Source of the DNA: Octopus sinensis
Lineage: Eukaryota
Length of the DNA: 64,000 bases
Reading direction: 5' to 3'
Assembly (NCBI RefSeq): GCF_006345805.1
Contig: NC_043002.1
Coordinates: forward strand, 116,746,001 to 116,810,000
Shown here: positions 12,028 through 56,399 of the stretch, piece by piece
How the letters are laid out: the number at the start of each line of letters is the position of its first letter
Position numbering within the stretch: the stretch's first letter is position 1
Translations under genes and position numbers: made by a program
Notes under the pieces: model-generated
Database searches by the model: none
What the model saw: the letters and a program-made list of their open reading frames with translations, nothing else
What the model was told of the DNA's origin: nothing

Positions 12028-12553
12028 AACAGAAAAAAGATGGTATAGGCACACACCAGAAAAGGTCACAGAAAATGAGAAAGCAACCATACTCTGGGAT
12101 ATGCCGATACACACAGATAGAGAAATTAAGGCTAACAGACCAGATATAGTTGTCAGAGATCATGAAGGAAAAAAATGCTTTCTAATTGATGTATCAATAC
12201 CGGCAGATGACAACGTGTCTCTAAAAGAAATGGAGAAACTCTCAAAATACAAAGACCTGGAAATAGAGGTAACTAGAATGTGGAATCTGAAAACAGAAAC
12301 AATTCCTATCATAGTAGGTGCATTAGGCATGATAAAAAAATATTCAGACAAATACATAACAAAAACACCAGGACTTACAAACACATATAACATACAGAAA
12401 ATTGCACTACTAGGCACTGCACACATCCTACGCAGAACACTTTCCATACAATAACCATCAGAGCATCACAACAAATCACAGCACATACCCAAGGCACACA
12501 GAGCTGCGCTCGGTAGTGAAGTGAAAGCACGCTATAAAAATAGAACTACTGAA
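12028..12553 (+). mobile_element. Dong/R4-clade LINE, 5'-truncated copy (RLE endonuclease domain + 3' UTR)
   Basis: ORF 12101-12454 RPDIVV..IDVSIPAD..KEMEKLSKYKDL..PIIVGALG; near-identical to 46585-47151; followed by (AAT)n. Confidence 0.92.
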
Positions 12554-16049: not shown

Positions 16050-17720
16050 AGAAGAAGAACCGGAGTTAGAGCCAGTGGAAGGTTACAAATATTTAGAGGT
16101 ATAAGAAGGTGATGGAATCAAACATTCAACAATGAGGGAAAAGATCAGAAAAAAAAAGAATGTTATCGCAGAGTAAGGGCAATACGCAAGACAGAGTTAA
16201 ATGAAAAATATAGGATCGAAGCAGTTAATACTTTAAGCCGTACCGGTCGTGACGTACAGTTTCAATATTAGCGAAGCAGTAAGATTTCCAAGCTTGGTAG
16301 AAATATCAGAAAATTGTTGTCAATGAGTAGAATGTTCCATCCTAAGGCAGATGTGGAACGACTTTACTTGCCAAGAAAAGGTGTTCATGGACTTTTACAA
16401 CTTGAATTGACACTGAGAATTGACACGATTGGCCTAAACATTTATCTGAAACATTCTGATGACTGGATGCACGAAAACAAGAAAAACCTCATATTCAGTA
16501 ACAAAAGAGGCAATGAAATATCAAACTAAATTCGAAATACAGCAAGTCCAAGAACTACATGAGCTGAGAAAAAGCTAAGTGTATGAAAACCCTTGCTGAA
16601 AATACTACCTTAAGTATTTTCATTGAAAAATAGCGGGAAAAACCACTCAGTGGCAAATACCCAGAGTTAACAATGCTTATATTAACAAAGCTCTTATCCA
16701 TCAATGGTTAGCATCTTCTGGCTTAAAATCAGAGACAGAAGGGTTTATCATAGCAGCCCATGATCAATGCCTACCTACAAGAAGCTAACAGGCCAATACC
16801 TTAAAGAACAGCAGTGGCCCAACATGTGTATGAAGACAACAAACTGAAAACATCGATCATATTGTCTCCGTGAGTAGCCTTCTTGCACCTACAGAGTATC
16901 TCAACAAGCATGATAGAGTGACACAGTGTGTTCACAGAGTAATTTACAAGGATATGAACCTGCCACATGACAAGAACTGGTGGGAATACAAGCAAACCAC
17001 CTCCAATACTTGAAAATGATCGTATCCTACTCCTTTCGCTTAACTAACAGAAAAATAAATGAAAATAAGTCACACAATATATTGATTTATGTCAGACAAA
17101 AAACCATGCCTTTTCATCGTTCTGATTGTCCCAATCGACATAAATGTATCTGTCAAGGTCTACCAAAAGCTGAGCAAGTATAAAGAACTTGAAATAGAAA
17201 CTGGCAAAATGTGGAAACTCAAGACAAGAACAATACCTGTTATCATAGGTGCTCTAGGAATGATAGCAAAATGGGCTGATAGTTACCTGCCACAGATTCT
17301 AGGTAATCCCCAAATGAAAGAAATTCAAAAAGTAGTGCTCATGGGAACTGCTCATATCCTACGAAAAATACAGTCTATATTTAGACTGTATTTTATCAAA
17401 AGTAATTTAAAGTCTGATAGCATTTTATCAAAAGTAATTTAAACGTACATAACAGTAAATATTTTTTTTACTGTCATCTTTTAAGATGTGTGATTTTAAT
17501 CACACTACCATCTTATTACCAAATTACTTTAAAACATTATAATTTCAATTTTAATTAAGTTTTGACAGATATTCTCTAGATCAGTACTTTGCACAAATCC
17601 AAATCATGGCAGTCATCAACCACCCTAGTCATAATACCGACTTGAACTTGTAACTTGTCCCATGAGGTCGCTGGTTAAGACGAGGAGTGAACTTATACAT
17701 TCACAAAACAAAATCCAAAT
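16050..17720 (+). mobile_element. Degenerate Dong/R4-clade LINE 3' half (same family as 47810)
   Basis: RMFHPKADVERLYLPRKG, GLKSETEGFIIAA, HDRV, PCLFIVLIVP..LSKYKEL..PVIIGALG, MGTAHILRKI; multiple stops. Confidence 0.85.
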
Positions 17721-44704: not shown

Positions 44705-47151
44705 AGGTCACCCAGGCACTGAGGTCACCCAGGCACTGCAAAGACTAAGCAACTGGAAGGCACCTGGGCATGACAAGATCCCCAACTTCTGGTTGAAATA
44801 TCTAACAGGAATGCACAAAAAGCTGACTGAAAACTTTAACAAAGTACTAGCAGAGCCAGAGACAATGCCTGAATGGCTCACGAAGGGGAAAACCATCTTA
44901 ATTCCCAAATCAAATGAAACAGAAAAACCAGAAAACTACAGACCAATAACCTGCCTCCCTACTATGTTCAAGGCATTTACTGCAGTGATATCACAAAGGC
45001 TGAACAAGCACCTGGACGAAAACAAACTGTTCCCAGAAGAGCAGAAAGGATGCCGCAAAGGCTCATATGGCTGTAAAGATCAACTAATGATTAATAAAGC
45101 CATAACTGAAGACAGCCACAGAAAGAAGAAAGGCCTCAGTATGGCCTGGATTGACTACAAAAAGGCGTTTGATAGCATCCCCCACACATGGATCCTCGAA
45201 ACACTAGCCATTAACAAAGTAGCACCAACAATCATAAAATTCTATGAATAAATGGCAAACAGTCCTACACCTCCAAACAAAAGAGGGACTCATGAAAACC
45301 AAAGACATCCCCATTAGAAGAGGAATATTCCAGGGAGACACGCTCTCTCCACTCCTTTTCTGCTTGGCACTGTCACCTCTATCTGATATGCTAAATAGAA
45401 CTGGATGCGGATATAAATGTTACGGCAAAACGATCAGCCACCTTTTATATATGGATGACCTAAAACTATACGCTGCAAATGACAAACAGCTGGAAACACT
45501 ATTAAAGACAGTTCATGGATTTACCAAAGAAATAGATATGAAATTTGGATTAGAAAAATGCGCCAAAGTAACCCTGAAAAGAGGAAAACTAGTTAAGAGT
45601 AACAACATCACACTAGATAAAACCAATGAAATAAAAGAATTAGACCAAAGCGAAACTTACAAATACTTAGGAATCCATGAACTAGATAAGACACAACACA
45701 CACAAATGAAAGAGAAAATAAAAAAAGAATATTATAGACGAGTTAGATCAATACTAAACACAGAGCTCAATGCTAAAAACAAGATAATAGGTATCAACAC
45801 TTTAGTTGTCCCAGTTATAAGTTACAGCTACAATATCCTTAACTGGACACGAAATGAACTAACCAAAATAGATAGGAAAACAAGAAAAATAATGATAGGA
45901 TCTAGGATGCATCACCCAAAATCTGACATAGAAAGACTATATATACAACGTATAGAAGGTGGTAGAGGCCTTATACAGCTGGAAAACTACTATAAAATAA
46001 CCACCATAGGACTGCAAAAATATCTACTTCAGAAGGAAGGAAAACTGATCCAGATAGCGGCAAAACATGAGCAAAGCAAGAAACTGTTCTCAGTATTTAA
46101 GGAAGCTGACAAATACAAACAAGAAATCATACCACCTAATAAACATGAAGAAGAAGAAGAAGAAGATGAAGAAACAACAAAAGCTATAAAACAAATGAAA
46201 TCCAAACTAAAAATAGAACAGCAACGAACCATGATAAAACGATGGCAAGAAAAGCCCCTTCATGGTAAATACTGCACTAAACTAAACGCAAAAGAAATAG
46301 ACAAACAAAAATCCCAGCAATGGTTGAGAAGCTCAGGACTCAAAGCAGAAACAGAGGGATTTTTAATTGCAGCACAAGACCAAAGCCTCCCCACCAGAAA
46401 TTACCAAAAACATGTAATGAAAAGAAATATTACAAGTAACTGCAGAATATGTGGAGATGGACAAGAAACAATAAATCATATTATCTCTAGCTGCCCAGTC
46501 CTGGCTAAGAAGGAATATATTCACAGACATGACAGAGTTGGAACTACATACATTGGAAGCTATGCCAACATTATGGAATAACAACAGAAAAAAGATGGTA
46601 TAGGCACACACCAGAAAAGGTCACAGAAAACGAGAAAGCAACCATACTCTGGGATATGCCGATACACACAGATAGAGAAATTAAGGCCAACAGACCAGAT
46701 ATAGTTGTCAGAGATCATGAAGAAAAAAAATGCTTTCTAATTGATGTATCAATACCGGCTGATGAAGGAAAAAAATGCTTTCTAATTGATGTATCAATAC
46801 CGGCAGATGACAACGTGTCTCTAAAAGAAATGGAGAAACTCTCAAAATACAAAGACCTGGAAATAGAGGTAACTAGAATGTGGAATCTGAAAACAGAAAC
46901 AATTCCTATCATAGTAGGTGCATTAGGCATGATAAAAAAATATTCAGACAAATACATAACAAAAACACCAGGACTTACAACACATATAACATACAGAAAA
47001 TTGCACTACTAGGCACTGCACACATCCTACGCAGAACACTTCCATACAATAACCATCAGAGCATCACAACAAATCACAGCACATACCCAAGGCACACAGA
47101 GCTGTGCTCGGTAGTGAAGTGAAAGCACGCTATAAAAATAAAACTACTGAA
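44705..47151 (+). mobile_element. Young 5'-truncated Dong/R4-clade LINE (RT + CCHC + RLE) with about three frameshifts, flanked by (AAT)n
   Basis: ORFs 44793-45251, 45244-46581 and 46656-47012: NYRPITCL, WIDYKKAFDS, IFQGDTLSP, LYMDDLKL, CRICGDGQETINHIISSC, RHDRV, RPDIVV..IDVSIP..EKLSKY. Confidence 0.97.
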
Positions 47152-47339: not shown

Positions 47340-47508
47340 GAGTCCATGAAACAAATAGGGCGGAGCACTTGCAGAAAACAGTACTGCTTGGAACCGCTCG
47401 AATACTCCGGATAGTGCTCGGAAAATAAGGGCTGTTACCTTAGTTCACTGGTAGTGAACAGCTGACACCGTAGTACATCTCCAGCGTTAGAAACTGTTCA
47501 AAGACAAT
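47337..47508 (+). mobile_element. 3' end of another Dong/R4 family between (AAT)n tracts
   Basis: EHLQKTVLLGTARILRIVLGK* plus UTR. Confidence 0.8.
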
Positions 47509-47509
47509 G

Positions 47510-47566
<57 letters not shown>

Positions 47567-47567
<1 letters not shown>

Positions 47568-47640
47568 GCACATACCCAAGGCACACAGAGCTGCGCTCGG
47601 TAGTGAAGTGAAAGCACGCTATAAAAATAAAACTACTGAA
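47567..47640 (+). mobile_element. 74-bp terminal copy of the young Dong family
   Basis: Nearly identical to the last 74 bp of 44705-47151 and 12028-12553; (AAT)n upstream, (TAC)n(AAT)n downstream. Confidence 0.9.
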
Positions 47641-47711
<71 letters not shown>

Positions 47712-47809
47712 GCAACAGCAACAACAGCAATAACAACAACAATAATAATAATAATAATGATAATAAAAATATTAAAAAAATTATAGTAAAAATACAAAAT
47801 ATAAAATAT

Positions 47810-49100
47810 TTATCAACTCATTTGTATGGATGATTTAAAACTTTTTTAAAACATGACCAACAGCTCAACGGCTTACTAGCGATTGTTAAACAATTTAGTG
47901 ATGACATCAGAATTCAATTTGGCCTCGATAAGTGTGCAAAAGCTACCTTTATCAAAGGAAAAATGACAGAAACATCTAACGTTAACCTTGATCAGCAGAA
48001 TGTCATAAAAGAATTAGACCCAGCGGAGAACTGCAAGTATCTAGGGGTAATTGAAGGAGACGGAATAAGGCATTCAGAGATGAAGGAAAGGATCAGGAGA
48101 GAATGTTATCGCAAAGTAAGAGCAGTATTCAAGACAGCTGAATGCGAGAAACAGGATCGAAGCGATCAATGCATTAGCCATACCAGTCGTGACTTACAGT
48201 TTCAATATCGTTAACTGGTCAATTACTGAAATATGTAATCTTGACAGAAAAATACGAAAACTGTTGACAATGCATAGAATGCACCACCCTTAGTCAGATA
48301 TAGAAGGACTTTATCTGCCGAGAAAAAGAGGGTGGCTGTGGACTTTTACAACTGGCATTAACAATGAGGATTGCCACAATTGGCCTAGACACCTACCTGA
48401 AAAACTCTGAGGACTGGATGTTAAAATTTGTCTCAAAATACTCATACTCAGTAACAAAACAGGCAAAGGAATATCTAAGTGAATTCCAAATACCACAAAT
48501 TCCGAAATTAGGCATGCGAGAAACAAGCGCATGAAAACCCGTGCTAAAACTGCTGCCCTAGATATTCTGACTGATAAATGGCAAGAAAAACCTCTCTATG
48601 GCAAATACCCAAAGAGAGCGAATAATACTGAGGTTGACAAAGCCCTTACCCATCAATGGCTAATGCCTGCTGGCTTAAAATCTGAAACAGAAGGGTTTAT
48701 CATAGCAGTCCAAGATCAATGCCTACCTTCAAGGAACTACCAGACCAACATATTAAAGAACGGCAGTAACCCAACATGTGTATGTCAACAACAAAATGAA
48801 ACCATTGATCATGTTGTCTCCAAGTGCAGTCTTCTTGCGCCTACAGAGTGTCTCAACAGGCATGATAGAGCTGCACAATATATTCACTGGGTAATTTTCA
48901 AAAGCCTGGACTTGCCCCATCATAAAAACTGGTGAGAACACAAACCACCTCCAGTGCTTCAAAATGACCACATCTCACTCCTCTGGAACTTCCCCATTCA
49001 AACTGACAGAAAGGTAGATGCGAATAGGCCAGACATCATATTGAAAGACTTCAGACAAAAAACATTGCCTCCTCACTGATATGACTGTCCCAATCGATAT
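47810..49100 (+). mobile_element. Degenerate Dong/R4 LINE (RT end to RLE), cut within the RLE by the next element
   Basis: HLYMDDLK remnant, FGLDKCAK, WQEKPLYGKYP, GLKSETEGFII, RHDRAA, ANRPDII..DMTVPID then abrupt end. Confidence 0.88.
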
Positions 49101-49855
49101 ACAATGGTAGAAAGAAAGAGGAGCAATGTGGAATCTCCACCTAAAAGCCCCAAGAAGAAAAGAAAGGCAGAGGAGAACAAGAACGAGAAAAGAAAGAATG
49201 AGGACCCAAGTGAGGAACGAACACAAAGACTGTTGCCTTCAACTAGTAAGGAGGAGGGAGGACGGAAGAAGACGAGACATAAAGTGAGAGGGAAGGACAA
49301 ACAGAGAAGGGAATACCAGTAAGAGAGGAAGAGAGTGGTGAAGAAGAGCAGAGAGAGCCACCGAATGGGAGATATGAAAGAACAAAATAAGTTACAAAAA
49401 GAGTAAAAGAGATAGAAAAGAAAATGTCAAAAAATGAAACATGTAATAAGGGTTAAAGTGGCTGATAGTGAGTAGAAGTGAGAAGAAGGAGCGGTTGGAG
49501 GAAGAAAGAGCAAGAAGGTTGCAGGAAATATTTGGCGACTGGAATTCGATTTCGATACGATTTCGAACTGCCACCAGTGGTAATATTTGACAATTTGATG
49601 AAACATATGGTGTGACTTTGTGTGGATTTTTAAACAAAAGGAAAACTAACAAGACACAAGACTGATAAGCAAAAACTTTATATAAAAGCAGTAAAATGAA
49701 ACTACTTGCGTATGGGGGCAAGTAAGTGTTTCCATCTTCATTTTCATTTATATTCATAATTCATTCGTTACATGTTTTTAAGTACCCCAATGTATTGTTC
49801 TGTCTGTCTTTTGTGTTGTCCCTTCTCTATGAGGCCTTGTGCCTAATGAAAGAAA
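49101..49855 (+). mobile_element. ORF1-only L1/Tx1-like unit 0 (5'-truncated: K/E-rich ORF1 tail + 3' UTR)
   Basis: MVERKRSNVESPPKSPKKKRK.., RLQEIFGD, FELPPVV..*; AT-rich UTR; terminal motif gaggccttgtgcctaatgaaagaaa shared with unit A. Confidence 0.7.
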
Positions 49856-51220
49856 TCAGGACGTTGGTGTTCTAGTCGAGTCGTTTGATTCACTGTTGCA
49901 TTTGATGTGTGTTCGCTCCATAAGAGTCTTGTTATTGTTAAATTGTTGAAGGTTTACCGCACCTAATTTTTGTCGACTGAATTGTTAAATTTATTGTTAC
50001 CTAAATTTTTATTCTTCTTCCAGATTTATGGGTGAAGTTGTGGATAATGTCGTTATGGAATGTCTACGGGTTCCAACAAGCAGTTACGCTGCAGTGACTG
50101 GGAAAAGTCTAACAGCAGATATACTGGAAGAGACAAATTTCAAGAAGGGAAAGGAACTGTTAAGAAAGGGAGACAGTATGAGGCTGACGCCGCCTAGGGA
50201 AGTTATTGAAAGGACAGAGAGAGAGACAATAATAGGCAGAACGGTGTCTATTGCAACAAAAAGAGTTGAAATAGCAGCAGTAGAGGCAGTGGAAGAATGA
50301 TTGTGAGAAGTCAAAGATCTAGCGACATGCTACACCAGAGGAAGGAAGTGTGGCACAGTGGAGGTGCGCTTCGTGAGCGAACAAGGAGCGATAAAGCGCT
50401 GCAGTTTGACTTTGAGATCAACTGAGTGGGTGCTACTACCAACCTGCTGCGGCAGGCGTGCAGCCAGAGTGAGGATTGGAGGAGTGCCCCCAGAAATTGA
50501 CGAGGCGTGGCTGGTGGCAGCCGTTCTCTATAGTGCAGAGGAGGACACCAAAATGTTGAAAATTGCAAGAACTACGGAGGTTAACTGCTGCGGATACGGC
50601 CTTGAGATGTTTGTTCACATCAGTTTGTTAGACCTCCACAAAATTGCAGAGGAATTGGTGTTGCCGGATGAGACTAGGCTGAGAGTTGTAGTGGAGGGAA
50701 GACCTCCAGTATGCTATCAATGTGGAGTACGGGGACACATCAAACCTAAGTGTCCACAAAAACACGAAGGGAAGGTAACGGATATGGAACAACAAGAAGA
50801 GGTAGACGTGAAAGGCATAGAGGAGCAGAACTGATGCAGTCTTGCTTGTAAATGAGAGGTGTGGAAGGTTGAAGGAACTATTCGGGGAAATGATAGAGAT
50901 ATTACCGTTGCAATTTCGAATCAATGAGTTGATGACATAATGGAATATCTAATATAAAGGAAAGTAAGTGAAATATTTACAATTTTAAAATAGAGACTTT
51001 TTTTTAAATGATGAAAAAGAAAAGAATCATGAACTGTGTGATTCATAAACAATAAAATGGAACTGCCTGCTTTGGGGGGGGGGGACAGGTAAGCCATTTC
51101 ATTTCATCAATCATTATTCATAATTTCATACTTTATGTGTTTTGTGTGCCCCTCTGTATTGCTTTGTCTGTCTCTGTATTGTCCCATCTTTATAAGAGGC
51201 CTTTTGCCTAATAAAAGAAA
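49856..51220 (+). mobile_element. ORF1-only L1/Tx1-like unit A, apparently full length (~1365 bp)
   Basis: 5' tcaggacgttggtgttc; ORF1 50028-~50940 with SYAAV, RVRIGGVPPEI, VVVEGRPPVCYQCGVRGHIKPKC; no ORF2; AATAAA at 51210-51215. Confidence 0.85.
50028..50834 (+). pseudogene. ORF1p/gag-like nucleic-acid-binding protein (RRM-like + CX2CX4HX4C), disrupted
   Basis: ORFs 50028-50300 and 50358-50834 share a frame, separated by stops; intact CCHC knuckle. Confidence 0.8.
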
Positions 51221-52915
51221 CCAGGTCGTTGGTGTTCATTTCGCGGATGTTTGCCACAAGTGGTTTGAGCTTTCTTTTGTCGTGTTAGACGTAAGTCCTA
51301 GTGTTAAATATTTGATTGATTGAGTATTACTGTTCAAATTCTTGCTAGTGTTATTTTGAATTGTTGTATTTCCCATTGTGGGAAAATGGAGAAAACGCCA
51401 GCAGGTGGCCACAGTTACGCGGCTGCAACTGTAAAGGGGATAGACATGGAAACGTTGGAGGTATGAGAAATAAAGGTTGAACCTCGAAATATGAAAGAAT
51501 GCGAGAAGTTGCTGGAAAGAGAGGGAAATACCCTGGAACTAACGATCAATGTAATGAAAAAACAGTGATATATAAGACAATGAAGATAGCAACAAGGAAA
51601 ATAGATATATCGACAATAGAGGCTATTGAAGAATGTTTGCAAAAGATTAACCACATTCATAACAAGATGGAGAAAATACGCTACTGTGTAGGTGTGTTTT
51701 GCATCAGAAGAGGACGCAATTAAGCACTGCACGGAGGCAATAAGAACGGAAGAATGGGTACTTTTGCCATTGTACTGTGACAAACGCGTGGCCAGGGTGC
51801 AAGTTGGCAAAGTGCCCCCAGAGCTGAAAGAAGCATGGAATATGACAGTCATAATGTATGACATGATTGAGGAGGCCAAGATACTGAAGGACACAAGAAC
51901 ACAAAGAATTAACTACTGGGGATATGGAATACAGTTAATCGTTCAAGCAACAGTGGAAGACCTAAACAGGATTGTGGAAGAGATAGTACTGCCCGATGAC
52001 GTAAAATTGAGAGTAATGGTGGAGGGCAGGCCGCCTATATGTTATACATGCTGGGGAAAGGGTCACATGAAGGTGATGTGCCCCCCCCCCCCCGAGGGAA
52101 CAACAAACAAAGCAGACCGAGAGGCAGGAGAGCACGGACCAGGTGATAAGGGAGAGATAAAGGAGAAATCAACAGAGGAGGGATTCACGGTATTTAAGAA
52201 AAGAAAGAGAAGTGGGAGGGTCAGTCCTCCACCAGAGCAGCAGAAAAAGAAGAAAGAAGAGATGGAAAAGTAGAAGATTAGAAGGAAGGAAGATGAAATT
52301 TTGGTGGCTAAAATAAACGAAAAGGAACTCGAAGAATTGTTCAAGAAGGAGATGCATAAGGAAGAGCCAGTGGTGGAGACACCGGTTGTTCCATTGGAGG
52401 AAGAAAATTTAGAAACGCAATTGGAGAGACTGTTCAGAATGGCGGAAGAAAAGAAGAAGGTACCAGGAGCGGAGCAGGGAAAGAGAAAACTAATAAGAAA
52501 AGGAAAATTTCGATGGAATTTTGTGACATGCGCAAAAGGCAAAGAAACTGAAAAGAAAGTATTCAAGTTTAAACATATAAGAGTAAAGTTGCCCACGGAT
52601 GTGTATTCCGAGAATGTAAAAAGCCATTGTGGTTCACAAGGACCTCTACAACAGACTAAAAGATATGTGTGGAGAAGGGATTGACCTGCCAGGTGTGATG
52701 GTGGAGTTCGATGAATTTCCACCTGTAGTGGAGCTAAAAGGTTTAGAGTCTTTCATGAGATATTAAATAGGAAAAAATGTAAGTAAAATTGTTTTATTGA
52801 AGAAAGAAGGGAAAAGTAAAATTATTTCATTTACAAAAGAAAATAGAAAAAACGAGATTAAGAAAAAACAATACGATAATAGAACGATTATAAATAGTTT
52901 ATATAATCGTTCAAA
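51221..52915 (+). mobile_element. ORF1-only L1/Tx1-like unit B (3' terminus missing)
   Basis: 5' ccaggtcgttggtgttc; ATG 51386 MEKTPAGGHSYAAA; VMVEGRPPICYTCWGKGHMKVMC; K/E-rich tail; RLKDMCGE..FPPVV..* at ~52766; AT-rich UTR; no ORF2. Confidence 0.85.
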
Positions 52916-52919
52916 TGAT

Positions 52920-54465
52920 ACTGTATGGGAGTGGGGCCCACGCAGCCATTTCAGCCTATCTTCTGGCTGAAACCCGGTTCCTTTTCAATAGGACCAACAA
53001 CCCGCTCCCACCTGCAGCCAGACACGGAGAAATGTATTTCGTGTAGCCGTTCAGCAGAGGGAGCAGATCTCTTTGGTCCCTTCAACCGGGTTTCTGTAGC
53101 AACGATTACATCCAAATCCGCAACCTGATGTCATTTAGGAAACGCCCTTGCTTCCAGCTTGACATCAGGCAACGTACATTTATACAACCGATACGAATAG
53201 CCATAATGTCTACCTTAGCTATTCTATGGTATCAGGTGGAGAGAAAATCTTCTGTTTTTTCCTGCCCGCAGGATCGGAGCTGGTAGGTCATTAAAAATGG
53301 AAGGATGAAAGTGTTTTCTCATTGTCCCAACTGCTTTCCTGAATTCATTCTTCAGGATTTTATGACTTTTTAAATCTATATCGTAGATTTCGTAATTGCC
53401 ACACTTGTCTGAGTGTTCATCTACCCTTTCGCTGTCTTCTTCAAATTTTATTCTCTCTGTATTAAACGCTGCCAAAACCTCCCCTTCATTCTCTCTCTTA
53501 GCTGTCTTCTTCGGTTTCTTGTCTGCAGGCACCGTTTTAGCTGGTACTGTCTGGAGTATTTTCCTTTTACTTCCTATTGGTTTTCTCTCTGGTTTTCTTT
53601 CTTCTCCTTTCCTTCGTCCTCCTCTTCTTCCTCTCCTTCTTTGCATTCCGAGTGGATATGTCCTAGCTGGCCGCACTGGAAGCACCTTGGTTTTCGTCCC
53701 TTCACAAGCACTATGAGGGACTCCTCTGCTATTTCTATTTTCTCTGGTATTTCTGCGAGAGCTTGGGACTCTGTCTGTACGACCATATTAATTGTCTGGC
53801 CGTGCCAAATCAGTTTATCTGTAACTGTCACCTGGTGAAGAGTGATTTTCTCCTCCAGGTTCATGGTTACGGCTACTATCAGCCATATGAGGTCCACATC
53901 TGGTGGAATTCTCCCTGTTCGAATTCTTCATCTCCGCCTTCCCATATATATGGGTATGAGTTCCACGTCGTCTTTATAGTTTCAACTGAATGGTATTGTG
54001 CCTTTTCCTCGATTACCATTGTGCCAAACTTTTTGCTGCGAGTTATGTACTCAATATCGGACCATGTTTGTTGTAAATCTTTTCCACCGTTTCTTTAGCC
54101 ATTCTGTCCATTTTTCTTCTGTTAAGATTATACGTTTTGTATATTATTGTTTTCCTTTTTTCCGTTTCTAACACTCTCTGTGGAGGTTCCTTCTTTTTGT
54201 AACATATTAGTGTACTTTTTTAATTCTTCTTTTTCTGTATTGAGTTGCCGGGTTCGACTCCCGGCTGCTGTTGCAAAACATTTTTTCTCTTCTTTTTGTA
54301 AACTTTTCACTGCTATATTTCTTGTTGATACAATTCTTGGGAGACTTGGAAAATCTTGTGGCGTCATTGGTTGGGGTGGCATAGGTGTGGTTGATGAGCT
54401 TTCTTTTGGGTTCGTGTCCGACGTGCTATTGTCTACGTGGCCGCACAACACGATTTTCTAAAGTA
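52920..54465 (-). mobile_element. L1/Tx1-like LINE with ORF1 and the first ~90 codons of ORF2 (APE endonuclease); rest deleted
   Basis: ORF1 ~54367-53224 with GRIPPDVDL and VLVKGRKPRCFQCGQLGHIHSEC; ORF2 ATG at 53204 MAIRIGCINVRCL..DLDVIVATETRL..GGSGLLVLLKR (frameshifted). Confidence 0.85.
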
Positions 54466-54514
54466 ATGGGCGAATAAAAAAAATGCTTTCAAAAAGCAAT
54501 TAACAGTCTTTAAC

Positions 54515-54535
54515 AGAAAATTATTATTATTATTG

Positions 54536-54579
<44 letters not shown>

Positions 54580-54590
54580 GATTGTTGTTG
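54515..54590. repeat. (ATT)n tract
   Basis: Directly visible. Confidence 0.9.
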
Positions 54591-56399
54591 TCTGTTTTGT
54601 TGATGCTCTTATTATCTATAATATTAATGATATGTTACATGGGGAAATGGCTAATTGAAGGAAGAAGTTAAGAGAGAAAGAGAGAGCAGAAATAGTGTGT
54701 AGCGGAGGGTAAAGTCGTAGCAGTTAGGAGCAGTAGATAAGGAACATTATTATGTTCAACGCTTAAAAGCTTGGGTTCAGAAAGAGGGATAAAACAGAGA
54801 GAGTGTGTGAGGGCTAGAGAGAAATAAATAGTACCAGTGAGGAAAGGGGGCGCTGCAGTGATATCATCATATGCGCACATGTGCCATATACTGACAAGCG
54901 TTAATAGCCGTTAAAATGGTGGTGCTTTCATCAGCAGGGATATTAGTTAATGAAGATGAGGACGATGAAAAGTGTACATCATTATTACCGTGTGCTTGAG
55001 TCTGCATTTTTATATGTTGTGACATAACCAGGAATTGATTACTTAGTGTTAGTGCATCTTTGTTTCTTGTTGTGATTGTCTTTGTCGACGCATATTGCTT
55101 CTTCATTTGTTACATCTATAAACTTAACGTCTATTTTTCCAGCTATATTACCTTGTAATAAATTTTGACACTTGCATCCATCGTCACACGATTTTCTAAT
55201 GTTCCATCACCAGTTTTAAGAAGCCACGTCGAAAATTCATTCTTCTCACTACATTCATGTCACTGAGATTTAATTTTTTTCTTCTCCAAATTGGTAAACG
55301 CTGATATAATCAAGTGCTGATGATATCAGCATTTGAACTTGTTCAAATAACGTATACCGTTTAACAGAAGTCCCCGCCAGGATTGTCATTTCCTATTATC
55401 TCTTTTCTAGGTGTATTAATTACTCTGAAAGCAATTGATGATAACAGAACCTTATCGATTATGAGGAAAGAGACCTGAAGGATAAAATTAGAGTGAAAGG
55501 AAGGAATTTTCGTGGAAACGTTGATGTATCCAGGGTAGGCATCGTTATTATTATTGTTATTGTTGTTCTTATTATTCTGATTGCTCCCGCGGCCTACCTA
55601 TTTTGCCTGTGTTTTGTGTGCCGTACATCCTCATATAAATCTGCGGATATTTCTGTGGTTTTAAAGGGGAGAACTGTTTTCTGCTCGCCTCAAGTAGCCA
55701 GTTAATTTATTGTAGAAACATATTTTTGCCAGATTCTCCTGTCCTGTCAATAAGGAAAAATATTTGATCAACAGTTTCATCATTGACCACAAAGATAATA
55801 CATTGCAATATTTTCCTGTTCACTAACATTTGAGCTTTCGTAGACTTCCTCAGTTAAACGGAATAAACAAATGGAAAAAGGAAGCCCCAGAGAACATGAA
55901 TAGGAAAACAAGCAAATGTGTGATAATCTATCGGTTCTATATATTTATCTATCTGTCTGTTGATCGATCCACCAATCTATTTGTCGGTCTAATTAACTAT
56001 CATATCTACTTTCCCTTCTGCTAATGCAGTGTACTTGCCTACTCTCAGTAACAAACCCAATAACAATAACAAAATAAAAAAAAAAGAAAAATGGTACGTG
56101 GTGGTGATCTAGCATGGTTACAACCTTTGTTCTGGAACTGGTAAAATTTAAAAACGCAACATTCATAGCTATTTGCTAACTAAGGTTATTTCACTTTAAT
56201 TTCTTTATCCTCCGATATCTCTTTCAATGCATAAATTTACAGATCTGCATGACATCGCTTCATAATGTTAAACATTTCGATTGGGCGTGCGATGTGAACA
56301 CACACATTCAGTTGGCATCATCTTTATTTAACTCTATTTCATTCTCTTTCACCATCTCTCTTTCTACTTTTCCAGTTATTTCACCATTTCTGTTTCCCT

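What the first reader, a model, noticed from the sequence alone, without database searches (positions are those of the whole stretch)
49101..52915. Head-to-tail array of divergent ORF1-only (gag-only) non-LTR retroelements
Seen: three consecutive + strand units (0: 49101-49855, A: 49856-51220, B: 51221-~52915). A and B each have an L1/Tx1-type ORF1 (SYAA N-terminus, RRM-like RVxxGxVPPE, VxVEGRPP-CX2CX4HX4C); unit 0 keeps only the tail. All three go from a K/E-rich tail into a short AT-rich UTR with no room for endonuclease or RT. The ORF1s are clearly diverged from each other, so this is not one deleted copy duplicated locally. Known: ORF1-only non-autonomous LINEs exist (mammalian HAL1; Drosophila HeT-A in head-to-tail telomeric arrays). 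Inference: an old lineage of ORF1-only parasites that borrow ORF2 in trans and insert next to their own kind. I do not know of such a system described in cephalopods.
Basis: partly seen in the sequence, partly recalled or inferred. Interest (0 to 1): 0.9.

Follow-up and report, generated by a model that had tools for sequence, protein, structure and literature searches.

The report
Octopus ORF1-only LINE copies in arrays
This stretch of an octopus genome holds a head-to-tail row of dead copies of an L1-like jumping gene that kept its RNA-binding gene (ORF1) and lost its copying enzyme (ORF2); the same rows recur elsewhere in octopus genomes, so this is a "half-LINE" parasite like mammalian HAL1 that also builds arrays.

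Summary
Three + strand units (0: 49098-49859; A: 49860-51224; B: 51225-~52956) are diverged copies of one ~1.9-kb element: 5'UTR, one ORF1, ~330-nt 3'UTR, no room for ORF2. A and B share 42-48% of amino acids.

- All three copies are dead (stops, frameshifts, a deletion, a 5' truncation).
- ORF1p has a conserved C-terminal domain after the K/E-rich stretch.
- A ~130-nt 3' terminal segment ending AATAAAGAAAC is more conserved than the coding DNA.
- A fourth, inverted unit C (52958-54520, minus strand) runs from ORF1 into the start of an endonuclease.

Relatives were found only in octopods, apart from a distant group in one unidentified ENA assembly. There the homologous ORF1 precedes APE, RT and zf-RVT, and the ORF2 is L1-like. 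In O. bimaculoides, an ORF2-bearing relative with the same 5' head and 3' end sits inside a five-unit array.

So these are ORF1-only L1/Tx1-like elements, probably mobilised in trans. dN/dS among copies is 0.18-0.39. The claim that no relative carries ORF2 fails. How arrays form is unresolved. I rate it a new variant of a known kind, of moderate interest.

The parts
48531..49097 (+). Flank: the tail of ORF2 (zf-RVT) from an unrelated LINE, truncated at its 3' side exactly where unit 0 begins.
   Evidence: Pfam zf-RVT. The tail matches other copies at 46656-47012, 12101 and 17101, but the match stops at ~49061-49097. The remainder is not found downstream.
49098..49859 (+). Unit 0: a 5'-truncated ORF1-only element. 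It keeps the K/E-rich region, the C-terminal domain (to ~49600, with stops), the 3'UTR and the terminal segment X (49715-49859, ending gcctaatgaaagaaatcag).
   Evidence: Translation. Homology to the tails of P0003, P0004 and P0005. X aligns with unit A and with copies at other loci.
49860..51224 (+). Unit A: 5'UTR 49860-50027; ORF1 50028-50834 (TGA stops at 50298 and 50304); an internal deletion of ~500 bp; a remnant of the C-terminal domain at ~50860-50935; the 3'UTR; X at 51080-51224, ending gcctaataaaagaaaccag.
   Evidence: The remnant 'LKELFGEMIEILPLQFRINELMT*' aligns with the P0003 C-terminus.
51225..52956 (+). Unit B: 5'UTR 51225-51386; ORF1 51387-52766 (stops at 51465 and 52271, at least three frameshifts), ending ...LESFMRY*; an A-rich 3'UTR; only the first ~14 nt of X (gcagccatttca, 52943-52954).
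   Evidence: It is collinear over 1.4-1.6 kb with L001, L002, L003u1/u2 and L004u1/u2 at 62-70% nucleotide identity.
49686..49872 (+). Conserved non-coding block, copy 1: the end of the 3'UTR, X, and the first ~13 nt of the next unit's head.
   Evidence: 75% identity to 51047-51237 (E = 1e-25). The ORF DNA of A and B gives no blastn hit at the same settings.
51047..51237 (+). Conserved non-coding block, copy 2.
   Evidence: The alignment with five external 3' ends, including that of the ORF2-bearing L003 unit, is.
53224..54451 (-). Unit C ORF1, inverted and frameshifted: CFATAAG N-terminus, RIRTGRIPPDVD, VLVKGRKPRCFQCGQLGHIHSEC (53577-53927), a K/E-rich part, and a C-terminal domain ending at 53224.
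   Evidence: tblastn against A and B: 29-35% identity, E = 1e-11 to 1e-17. Pfam zf-CCHC. Translation.
52958..53213 (-). Start of unit C's ORF2: about 82 aa of an APE endonuclease N-terminus read across two frameshifts (MAIRIGCINVRCL..DVIVATETRLKG..LLNGYTKYISP..GSGLLVLLKRNRVS). It is cut where B's 3' end is cut.
   Evidence: tblastn with the L003 APE, E = 0.003. BLASTP of the frameshift-corrected peptide against the L005 APE N-terminus, E = 6e-4, collinear from residue 1. Pfam finds nothing in this short piece.

Best explanation
The units are copies of a non-autonomous, ORF1-only branch of an octopod L1/Tx1-like LINE group.

Anatomy. A full unit is about 1.9 kb.
- It starts with a ~160-nt 5'UTR that has a defined head (GTTGAGCAGCAG... 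or G(A/T)CGTTGGTGTTC...).
- It has one ORF of 400-480 aa: an SYAA N-terminus, two tandem RRM folds, one CCHC knuckle, a K/E-rich linker and a conserved C-terminal domain.
- It ends with a ~330-nt 3'UTR whose last ~130 nt (segment X, ending GCC(A/T)AATAAAGAAAAC) are conserved across families.
- There is no poly(A) tail and no ORF2.

Mobilisation (inferred). The RNA is reverse-transcribed and inserted by the ORF2 protein (APE + RT) of related autonomous elements. These share the 5' head, the ORF1 type and X. X is the likely recognition site for that enzyme.

Arrays. Autonomous and ORF1-only members of different families lie head to tail. The 3' end of one abuts the 5' head of the next with nothing in between. 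Two routes fit best. In the first, the RT jumps end-to-end from the 5' end of one RNA to the 3' end of another during a single insertion. In the second, new copies insert at the 5' head of resident copies. I cannot tell these apart.

This window. The copies here are dead relics. Unit 0 is 5'-truncated at the upstream edge of the array. B's 3' end and C's ORF2 were lost in a later rearrangement.

Shown: the anatomy, the homology, recurrence of the layout and of the arrays, purifying selection, and the existence of ORF2-bearing relatives. Inferred: trans-mobilisation, the role of X, and how the arrays form.
For: 1. ORF1-only anatomy. It is seen in window units 0, A and B and in L002, L003u1-u3, L004u1 and L008, where the distance from the stop codon to the terminus is ~330 nt or the terminal segment X is present. 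L001 and L007 show no ORF2 hits downstream of ORF1, but their 3' ends could not be read.
2. Distribution. Relatives are in O. bimaculoides, O. sinensis, O. vulgaris and Argonauta hians. A profile search found 973 cluster representatives at E <= 1e-3 and 233 at E <= 1e-10. The 10 long ones scanned are chimeric gene models (RGS, WD40) or carry only a zinc knuckle; none has RT.
3. Outgroup. In ENA assembly ERZ21867824 the homologous ORF1 is followed on the same strand by Exo_endo_phos, RVT_1 and zf-RVT. That ORF2 matches human L1 ORF2p at E = 1e-54, against 1e-27 for R2.
4. Fold. The predicted ORF1p core (pLDDT 80-96 over residues 50-230) is best matched by tandem RRM1-RRM2 proteins.
5. ORF2-bearing relatives. 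L003 unit 4 has an ORF1 N-terminus, then APE (Pfam E = 9e-9), a sequence gap, zf-RVT (E = 5e-10) and a 3'UTR ending in X. The head of a further unit follows. Window unit C runs into an APE N-terminus.
6. Defined termini. L001 and L003u1 start at the same head after unrelated DNA. L002 and L008 end with X.
7. X is conserved. It is 75% identical between A and unit 0, while the ORF DNA of A and B gives no blastn hit.
8. Selection. dN/dS is 0.18-0.39 among B-type ORF1-only copies.
9. Arrays mix families. A and B share ~45% of amino acids. L003 has B, B, an A-like unit and an ORF2 type. Adjacent units (88% identity) are no closer than units on different chromosomes (85-87%).
10. Partners exist. L1-Tx1 LINEs are reported as recently active in O. 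vulgaris: 13 families, 421 insertions (PMC13282606).
Against: - No intact ORF1-only copy and no intact autonomous partner was recovered. L003 unit 4 has an internal deletion that joins the ORF1 N-terminus to APE, plus a 1.3-kb run of N.
- The APE call in unit C rests on weak scores (E = 6e-4 and 0.003) and a frameshift-corrected reading.
- No target-site duplications or poly(A) tails were seen, so retrotransposition of these units is inferred from family context, not from insertion hallmarks.
- No conserved RNA fold was found in X.
- Only five octopus loci plus this window (about 16 units) were examined. Genome-wide proportions are unknown.
- One deletion or several independent ORF2 losses are both possible. 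The NJ tree has no support values.
- All seven internal array junctions have full-length heads, but with ~27% of units truncated overall this would happen by chance about one time in nine.
Confidence: 0.72

Rival explanations
1. These are ordinary autonomous L1/Tx1-like LINEs that each lost ORF2 by deletion after insertion. On this view there is no replicating ORF1-only lineage, only decayed copies.
For: ORF2-bearing relatives exist and lie in the same arrays. Internal deletions are common in these copies: unit A lacks ~500 bp, P0008 lacks part of the RRM region, and L003 unit 4 joins ORF1 to APE.
Against: The same layout, an ORF1 stop followed by a collinear ~330-nt 3'UTR, is found in B-type copies on three O. 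bimaculoides chromosomes, in O. sinensis and in this window. These copies differ from each other with dN/dS of 0.18-0.39. That means they were copied while already ORF1-only and while the protein mattered.
Confidence: 0.1
2. The arrays arise from local tandem duplication or unequal crossing-over after a chance double insertion, as described for Drosophila TE dimers. No insertion preference or template jumping would be involved.
For: TE dimers that expand by unequal exchange are documented (PMC5932611). L003u1 and L003u2, and L004u1 and L004u2, are same-family neighbours.
Against: Neighbouring units are often from different families: A and B share ~45% of amino acids, and L003u2/u3/u4 differ. 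Same-family neighbours (88%) are no more alike than copies on other chromosomes (85-87%). [quoted passage not shown] Here seven of seven are tail-to-full-head with nothing in between.
Confidence: 0.1
3. This is a tandemly arrayed host gene family derived from a retrotransposon gag (a domesticated CCHC/RRM protein), not a mobile element.
For: Each unit has an AATAAA at its end and a defined start, like a small gene. ORF1 is under purifying selection. RefSeq annotates some copies as 'uncharacterized protein LOC...'.
Against: - The copies here and elsewhere carry stops and frameshifts.
- 5'-truncated copies exist (unit 0, L002, L004u1).
- Copies are scattered over many chromosomes and inside other genes' models, fused to RGS and WD40.
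- Several hundred relatives fall into separate clusters at 50% identity: 233 at E <= 1e-10.
- The termini are shared with ORF2-bearing LINE copies.
Confidence: 0.03
4. It is a Penelope-like or retrozyme-type element, whose partial head-to-tail tandems (pseudo-LTRs) are a hallmark.
For: It shows head-to-tail arrangement with direct abutment and no poly(A). Penelope elements are abundant in octopus, and non-autonomous PLEs produce multicopy head-to-tail insertions (PMC8557442).
Against: There is no hammerhead ribozyme or any other Rfam match in 46-56 kb. The linked ORF2 has an APE endonuclease, an L1-like RT and zf-RVT, not GIY-YIG.
Confidence: 0.02

Closest known systems
HAL1 ('half-L1') of mammals
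   Same: It is a non-autonomous derivative of an L1-type LINE that keeps the 5' part with ORF1 and lacks ORF2, is mobilised in trans, and forms its own replicating families (PMC5753468, citing Smit 1999 and Bao & Jurka 2010).
   Different: The octopus ORF1 is of the RRM + CCHC type with an extra C-terminal domain, not the coiled-coil/RRM/CTD type of mammalian L1. The 3' end is a conserved ~130-nt segment without poly(A). The copies form heterogeneous head-to-tail arrays. Whether ORF2 was lost once or several times is not known here; HAL1 arose several times.
Drosophila HeT-A, with TART and TAHRE
   Same: A gag-only non-LTR element that depends on the RT of relatives and lies in mixed head-to-tail arrays with them (and my own knowledge).
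   Different: The Drosophila arrays are at chromosome ends and are built by end-addition. The octopus loci are internal (for example 51.4 Mb into a 94.6-Mb chromosome). HeT-A belongs to the jockey clade, and its array junctions are often tail-to-internal.
L1-Tx1 LINEs annotated in Octopus vulgaris
   Same: They have the same host group and the same general type (APE + L1-like RT + zf-RVT, ORF1 with RRM + CCHC). They are reported as recently active, with 13 families and 421 insertions (PMC13282606). They are the likely autonomous partners, and repeat annotation probably files these units under them.
   Different: That paper's text does not mention ORF1-only members or head-to-tail arrays. I could not compare sequences with its library. 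My clade assignment rests on domain order and on a PDB sequence match to L1 ORF2p, not on an RT phylogeny.
Internally deleted R2/R1 non-autonomous elements and R1 tandem arrays
   Same: They are non-autonomous elements made by internal deletion that keep the 3' end needed for RT binding. They also show tandem arrays and RT template jumping in a non-LTR system (titles and abstracts of PMC3414825 and PMC2718515; PMC5932611).
   Different: Those elements are specific to rDNA sites, use a restriction-like endonuclease (R2) and do not retain a selected ORF1. R1 tandems carry a 33-nt target duplication between units, whereas no spacer is seen here.

Membership tests
APE-type non-LTR retrotransposon of the L1 group (L1/Tx1-like) | ORF2 with an N-terminal APE endonuclease, an L1-type RT and a C-terminal zinc-binding domain | tested here: met
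   Met for relatives, not for units 0, A and B. The outgroup loci L005 and L006 have Exo_endo_phos, RVT_1 and zf-RVT, and that ORF2 matches L1 ORF2p at E = 1e-54. O. bimaculoides L003 unit 4 has APE and zf-RVT. Window unit C has an APE N-terminus with weak scores.
APE-type non-LTR retrotransposon of the L1 group (L1/Tx1-like) | ORF1p of the RRM + CCHC zinc-knuckle type, as in Tx1 and plant L1 | tested here: met
   One CX2CX4HX4C knuckle, with Pfam zf-CCHC borderline at 19-21 bits. The predicted core is two tandem RRM folds. It is homologous to ORF1 of the ORF2-linked outgroup elements.
APE-type non-LTR retrotransposon of the L1 group (L1/Tx1-like) | Placement inside the Tx1 clade by RT phylogeny | not tested
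   No reference RT set (Repbase/Dfam) was available, and the only octopus RT stretch recovered is mostly a run of N.
APE-type non-LTR retrotransposon of the L1 group (L1/Tx1-like) | Insertion hallmarks: target-site duplications, 5' truncation, and a poly(A) or defined 3' tail | tested here: inconclusive
   5' truncations are present (unit 0, L002, L004u1), and there is a defined 3' terminus without poly(A). No target-site duplication was identified at the few solo copies.
ORF1-only non-autonomous LINE (HAL1-like) | Units keep the 5'UTR, ORF1 and 3' end of a LINE but have no ORF2 | tested here: met
   The distance from the ORF1 stop to the terminus is ~330 nt in unit B (as far as it is preserved), L002 and L004u1, and L008 has the same layout. 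Full units measure ~1.9 kb.
ORF1-only non-autonomous LINE (HAL1-like) | The deleted form itself replicated: many copies with the same layout that diverged from each other | tested here: met
   B-type copies on three O. bimaculoides chromosomes, in O. sinensis and in this window are collinear. Their dS is 0.27 to >1 with dN/dS of 0.18-0.39. The sample is small.
ORF1-only non-autonomous LINE (HAL1-like) | An autonomous partner that shares the 3' end | tested here: met
   The ORF2-bearing L003 unit 4 ends in the same X segment (TGTCTGTCC..GTCCCCTCT..AAATAAAAGAAA). That copy is itself defective. An intact partner was not recovered.
ORF1-only non-autonomous LINE (HAL1-like) | Mobilisation in trans by the partner's ORF2p | not testable with these tools
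   This needs a retrotransposition assay or polymorphic insertions.
Telomeric retrotransposon arrays (HeT-A/TART type) | Arrays located at chromosome ends | tested here: not met
   The loci lie at 51.45 of 94.6 Mb, 28.1 of 58.2 Mb, 153 of 215.6 Mb and 86 of 135.6 Mb. The nearest to an end is 0.94 Mb into an 18.6-Mb chromosome.
Penelope-like elements / retrozymes | A hammerhead ribozyme in the terminal repeat and a GIY-YIG endonuclease partner | tested here: not met
   There is no Rfam match in 46-56 kb at E <= 1. The linked endonuclease is of the APE type.

The most novel reading that the evidence does not exclude
An octopod L1/Tx1-like superfamily targets itself. Autonomous and gag-only members of many diverged families are concatenated precisely end to end, either by RT template jumping between co-packaged RNAs or by insertion at the 5' head of resident copies. 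This builds chromosome-internal mixed arrays, a non-telomeric counterpart of HeT-A/TART. On this reading the ORF1-only lineages have persisted under selection since before octopus species diverged, which implies that their ORF1p is needed in cis for hijacking the partner's ORF2p.
Probability: 0.3. Interest if true: 0.65.

Novelty: new variant of a known kind. Interest (0 to 1): 0.5.

Why it matters
ORF1-only LINE parasites are documented mainly in mammals (HAL1) and in Drosophila telomeres (HeT-A). A diversified lineage in octopods would be a third, independent case. It would be the first with an RRM + CCHC type ORF1, and it would show that keeping ORF1 while borrowing ORF2 is a recurrent and stable strategy.

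The precise tail-to-head joints between different families could inform how LINE reverse transcriptases switch templates or choose targets, and how transposons seed tandem arrays.

There is also a practical point. These units are annotated as 'uncharacterized CCHC-type proteins' in octopus gene sets and get fused into host gene models (RGS, WD40). They should be masked. Octopus LINE activity has been linked to the brain, so separating autonomous from half elements matters for expression studies.

Tried and rejected
- Pfam on the ORF1 translations found only a borderline zf-CCHC and no L1 ORF1 family.
- Exact-sequence look-ups of ten window ORFs, and of P0001 and P0003, found nothing in the collection, so no second copy of this very locus was obtained.
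- Rfam at E <= 1 over 46-56 kb gave no hits. I therefore dropped the hammerhead/Penelope idea.
- RNAalifold on seven 3' terminal segments predicted no pairs, so there is no evidence for a conserved 3' stem-loop.
- I considered a GT...AG 'intron' spanning X and the next 5'UTR (caggtaag at 51088, ttccag at 50020). The GT is not conserved in B-type copies, so I rejected it.
- I considered an LTR-like reading of the 190-nt repeat that flanks unit A. Solo units (L001, L003u1) have no X upstream, so X is 3'-terminal only, and I rejected it.
- The remainder of the LINE ORF2 tail interrupted at 49098 is absent downstream of the array, so an empty-site or target-duplication reconstruction was not possible.
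- The upstream flanks of L001 and L003u1 share only 'gagayagtct', too little to call a target motif.
- Pfam on the 82-aa frameshift-corrected APE piece of unit C found nothing. Support for it comes only from pairwise matches.
- The NJ tree of ORF1 cores has no support values and cannot decide between one and several ORF2 losses.


Full report
**1. What is in the window**

The window is AT-rich animal DNA (GC 0.30-0.42). Every close protein match is to octopods (Octopus bimaculoides, O. sinensis, O. vulgaris, Argonauta hians).

- Unit A (49860-51224) has an ORF from 50028 to 50834.
- Unit B (51225-~52956) has an ORF that begins at 51387.
- By tblastn the two proteins match at E = 1e-46 to 1e-49, with 42-48% identity. 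The similarity is real, and the copies are strongly diverged.
- Unit 0 (49098-49859) begins in the middle of the K/E-rich part.

**2. Corrections to the description**

- All copies are dead. A has two in-frame TGA codons (50298, 50304) and lacks about 170 codons. B has in-frame stops (51465, 52271) and at least three frameshifts.
- The protein does not stop in the K/E tail. Alignment with O. bimaculoides proteins shows a conserved ~70-residue C-terminal domain (IRVKLP...LK..FG..I...G....(Y/F)DELPPVV.....L..(Y/F)M..*). It is present in unit 0 (with stops) and in unit B (ending FMRY* at 52766), and survives as a 25-residue remnant in A.
- After the stop comes a ~330-nt 3'UTR. Its last ~130 nt, which I call X, end in GCC(A/T)AATAAAGAAAC. 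X plus the first nucleotides of the next unit is the only part of the units that blastn detects as repeated within the window: 49686-49872 against 51047-51237, 75% identity, E = 1e-25.
- A fourth unit, C, lies inverted at 52958-54520. It has the same ORF1 architecture at 29-35% identity.

**3. What kind of protein ORF1p is**

Pfam sees only a borderline zinc knuckle. An AlphaFold model of P0001 built on a 48-sequence alignment is confident over residues 50-230 (pLDDT 80-96). Its best PDB matches are tandem RRM1-RRM2 proteins such as HuC, IMP3 and U2AF65. The core is therefore two RRM folds followed by one CCHC knuckle.

A profile search of 1.84 billion cluster representatives found 973 relatives at E <= 1e-3 and 233 at E <= 1e-10. 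The 10 long hits I scanned with Pfam either carry only a zinc knuckle or are chimeric gene models in which a unit is fused to host exons (RGS, WD40). None contains a reverse transcriptase.

**4. Link to LINEs**

A profile restricted to the RRM-CCHC core found a distant group of homologues in one unidentified ENA assembly. In both loci I fetched from it, the homologous gene is followed on the same strand by ORFs with Exo_endo_phos, RVT_1 and zf-RVT. That ORF2 matches human L1 ORF2p at E = 1e-54, against 1e-27 for R2 proteins.

The outgroup ORF1 region also has a C-terminal extension with the same ...Y..LK..(F/Y)P..VGG motif. The octopus protein is therefore a true LINE ORF1p of the RRM + CCHC kind, and the parent elements are L1-like. 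I could not run an RT phylogeny, so 'Tx1' remains a likely but untested label. A 2026 repeat annotation of O. vulgaris lists 13 recently active L1-Tx1 families (PMC13282606).

**5. Other copies**

Five octopus loci could be fetched.

| Locus | Species | Content |
|---|---|---|
| L001 | O. bimaculoides | B-type unit |
| L002 | O. sinensis | B-type unit |
| L003 | O. bimaculoides | Array of five units |
| L004 | O. bimaculoides | Two units |
| L007, L008 | O. vulgaris | Units of a more distant clade |

- Collinearity. L001 and L002 are collinear with window unit B over 1.4-1.6 kb.
- 3' ends. Where the 3' end can be read (L002, L003u1-u3, L004u1, L008), nothing but the ~330-nt 3'UTR follows ORF1. 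L001's 3' end falls in a run of N, and L007's is disrupted.
- Unit termini. L001 and L003u1 start at the same head (GTTGAGCAGCAG...) after unrelated DNA. L002 and L008 end with X.
- Array junctions. Within arrays the 3' terminus of one unit abuts the head of the next, with no spacer, no poly(A) and no visible target duplication.
- Array composition. Arrays mix families: A next to B here, and B, B, an A-like unit and an ORF2 type in L003. Same-family neighbours (88% identity) are no closer than copies on other chromosomes (85-87%).
- A further junction. The gene model P0017 spans one: a B-type C-terminus joined to a 5'-truncated unit of the unit-0 type.
- Location. The loci are chromosome-internal.

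**6. ORF2-bearing relatives**

- In L003 the fourth unit has a head and an ORF1 N-terminus of this family. It then runs into an APE domain (Pfam E = 9e-9), a run of N, a zf-RVT domain (E = 5e-10) and a 3'UTR ending in X. The head of another unit follows.
- In the window, unit C continues past its ORF1 stop (53224) into about 82 residues of an APE N-terminus. This reading crosses two frameshifts and has weak scores (BLASTP E = 6e-4; tblastn E = 0.003).
- Autonomous-type relatives with the same ends therefore exist, and they share the arrays.
- C's ORF2 and B's X are both cut at ~52956. Unit 0 abuts a 3'-truncated ORF2 tail of an unrelated LINE whose remainder is missing. The locus has suffered later rearrangement.

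**7. Selection and age**

Nei-Gojobori estimates among B-type ORF1-only copies give dN/dS of 0.18-0.39, with dS from 0.27 to more than 1. For A against B, synonymous sites are saturated (pS ~0.8) while pN is 0.32. Post-insertion decay pushes these ratios towards 1, so ORF1 was clearly constrained while these ORF1-only families diversified. A rough NJ tree places the confirmed ORF1-only units apart from unit C, but it has no support values.

**8. Interpretation**

The best reading is a HAL1-like, ORF1-only branch of an octopod L1/Tx1-like LINE group. It would be mobilised in trans by ORF2p of relatives, which recognise the shared 3' segment X. This last step is inferred.

Array formation is a property of the whole group, and its mechanism is open.
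- Seven of seven internal junctions are tail-to-full-head. The truncated units seen in arrays (unit 0, L004u1) are the upstream-most ones.
- That pattern fits end-to-end template jumping, or insertion at resident heads, better than serial insertion at 3' ends.
- It also contrasts with Drosophila, where non-LTR tandems are mostly tail-to-internal (PMC5932611). With this sample the pattern could still arise by chance about one time in nine.
- The 33 nt of head-like sequence after the L002 unit suggests transcripts that end just past AATAAA, inside the next array unit.

**9. Rejected alternatives**

- A host gene family: the copies are broken, truncated and scattered, and they share their termini with LINEs.
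- Penelope-like elements or retrozymes: there is no ribozyme, and the partner endonuclease is APE.
- An LTR-like structure: X is found only at the 3' end.
- Purely local duplication: neighbouring units are heterogeneous.

**10. Novelty**

HAL1 and HeT-A are the known analogues (and my own knowledge). Four full-text searches turned up no description of ORF1-only LINEs or of such arrays in cephalopods; the only repeat paper I opened, the O. vulgaris annotation, mentions neither. I rate this a new variant of a known kind, of moderate interest. A genome-wide census is the obvious next step.

Noticed in passing
window 44793-47012 (+) and 47963-49097 (+); also 12101-12403 and 16955-17304: These are copies of a different LINE (RT ORFs, zf-RVT, and a tail with ...RPDIVV...IPIIVGALG). 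The tail ORF at 46656-47012 contains an internal 13-aa duplication (KKCFLIDVSIPAD). The second copy is cut exactly where unit 0 begins, and its remainder is missing.
   Followed up: partly
window 52943-52960: Unit B's 3' segment X and inverted unit C's ORF2 are both truncated at the same point. This tail-to-tail joint between two incomplete elements points to a deletion or inversion after insertion.
   Followed up: partly
window 54520-54600, also 47440-47800 and many other sites: An (AAT)n-type microsatellite bounds unit C's 5' side. The same repeat gives dozens of matches across the window.
   Followed up: no
L002 11304-11340: After the unit's AATAAAGAAAC terminus come 33 nt that resemble the 5' head of an A-type unit, followed by (CA)n. 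This could be a 3' transduction from a source copy that sat in an array, or the stump of a deleted neighbour.
   Followed up: partly
L007 9710-9790 and 11718-11790; L008 11915-12000: A SINE-like repeat (..tagggctaaata..ttcccttcatgggactgtta..) lies on both sides of the L007 unit and downstream of the L008 unit. It could be a preferred target or a coincidence.
   Followed up: no
L003 14544-15430: In the ORF2-bearing array unit, about the first third of ORF1 is joined directly to the APE domain, which lacks its own first ~30 residues. This is an internal deletion of a different kind from the ORF2 loss.
   Followed up: partly
proteins P0049 and P0130 (octopus gene models): ORF1-only units are fused into annotated host proteins (RGS-domain and WD40-repeat genes). 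Public octopus gene sets are therefore contaminated by this family.
   Followed up: no
L001 14863-15122: This fragment is 56-72% identical in protein to the ORF1 N-terminus of the ORF2-bearing L003 unit 4. It lies 4 kb downstream of the B-type unit in L001, with no APE or RT hit nearby.
   Followed up: no
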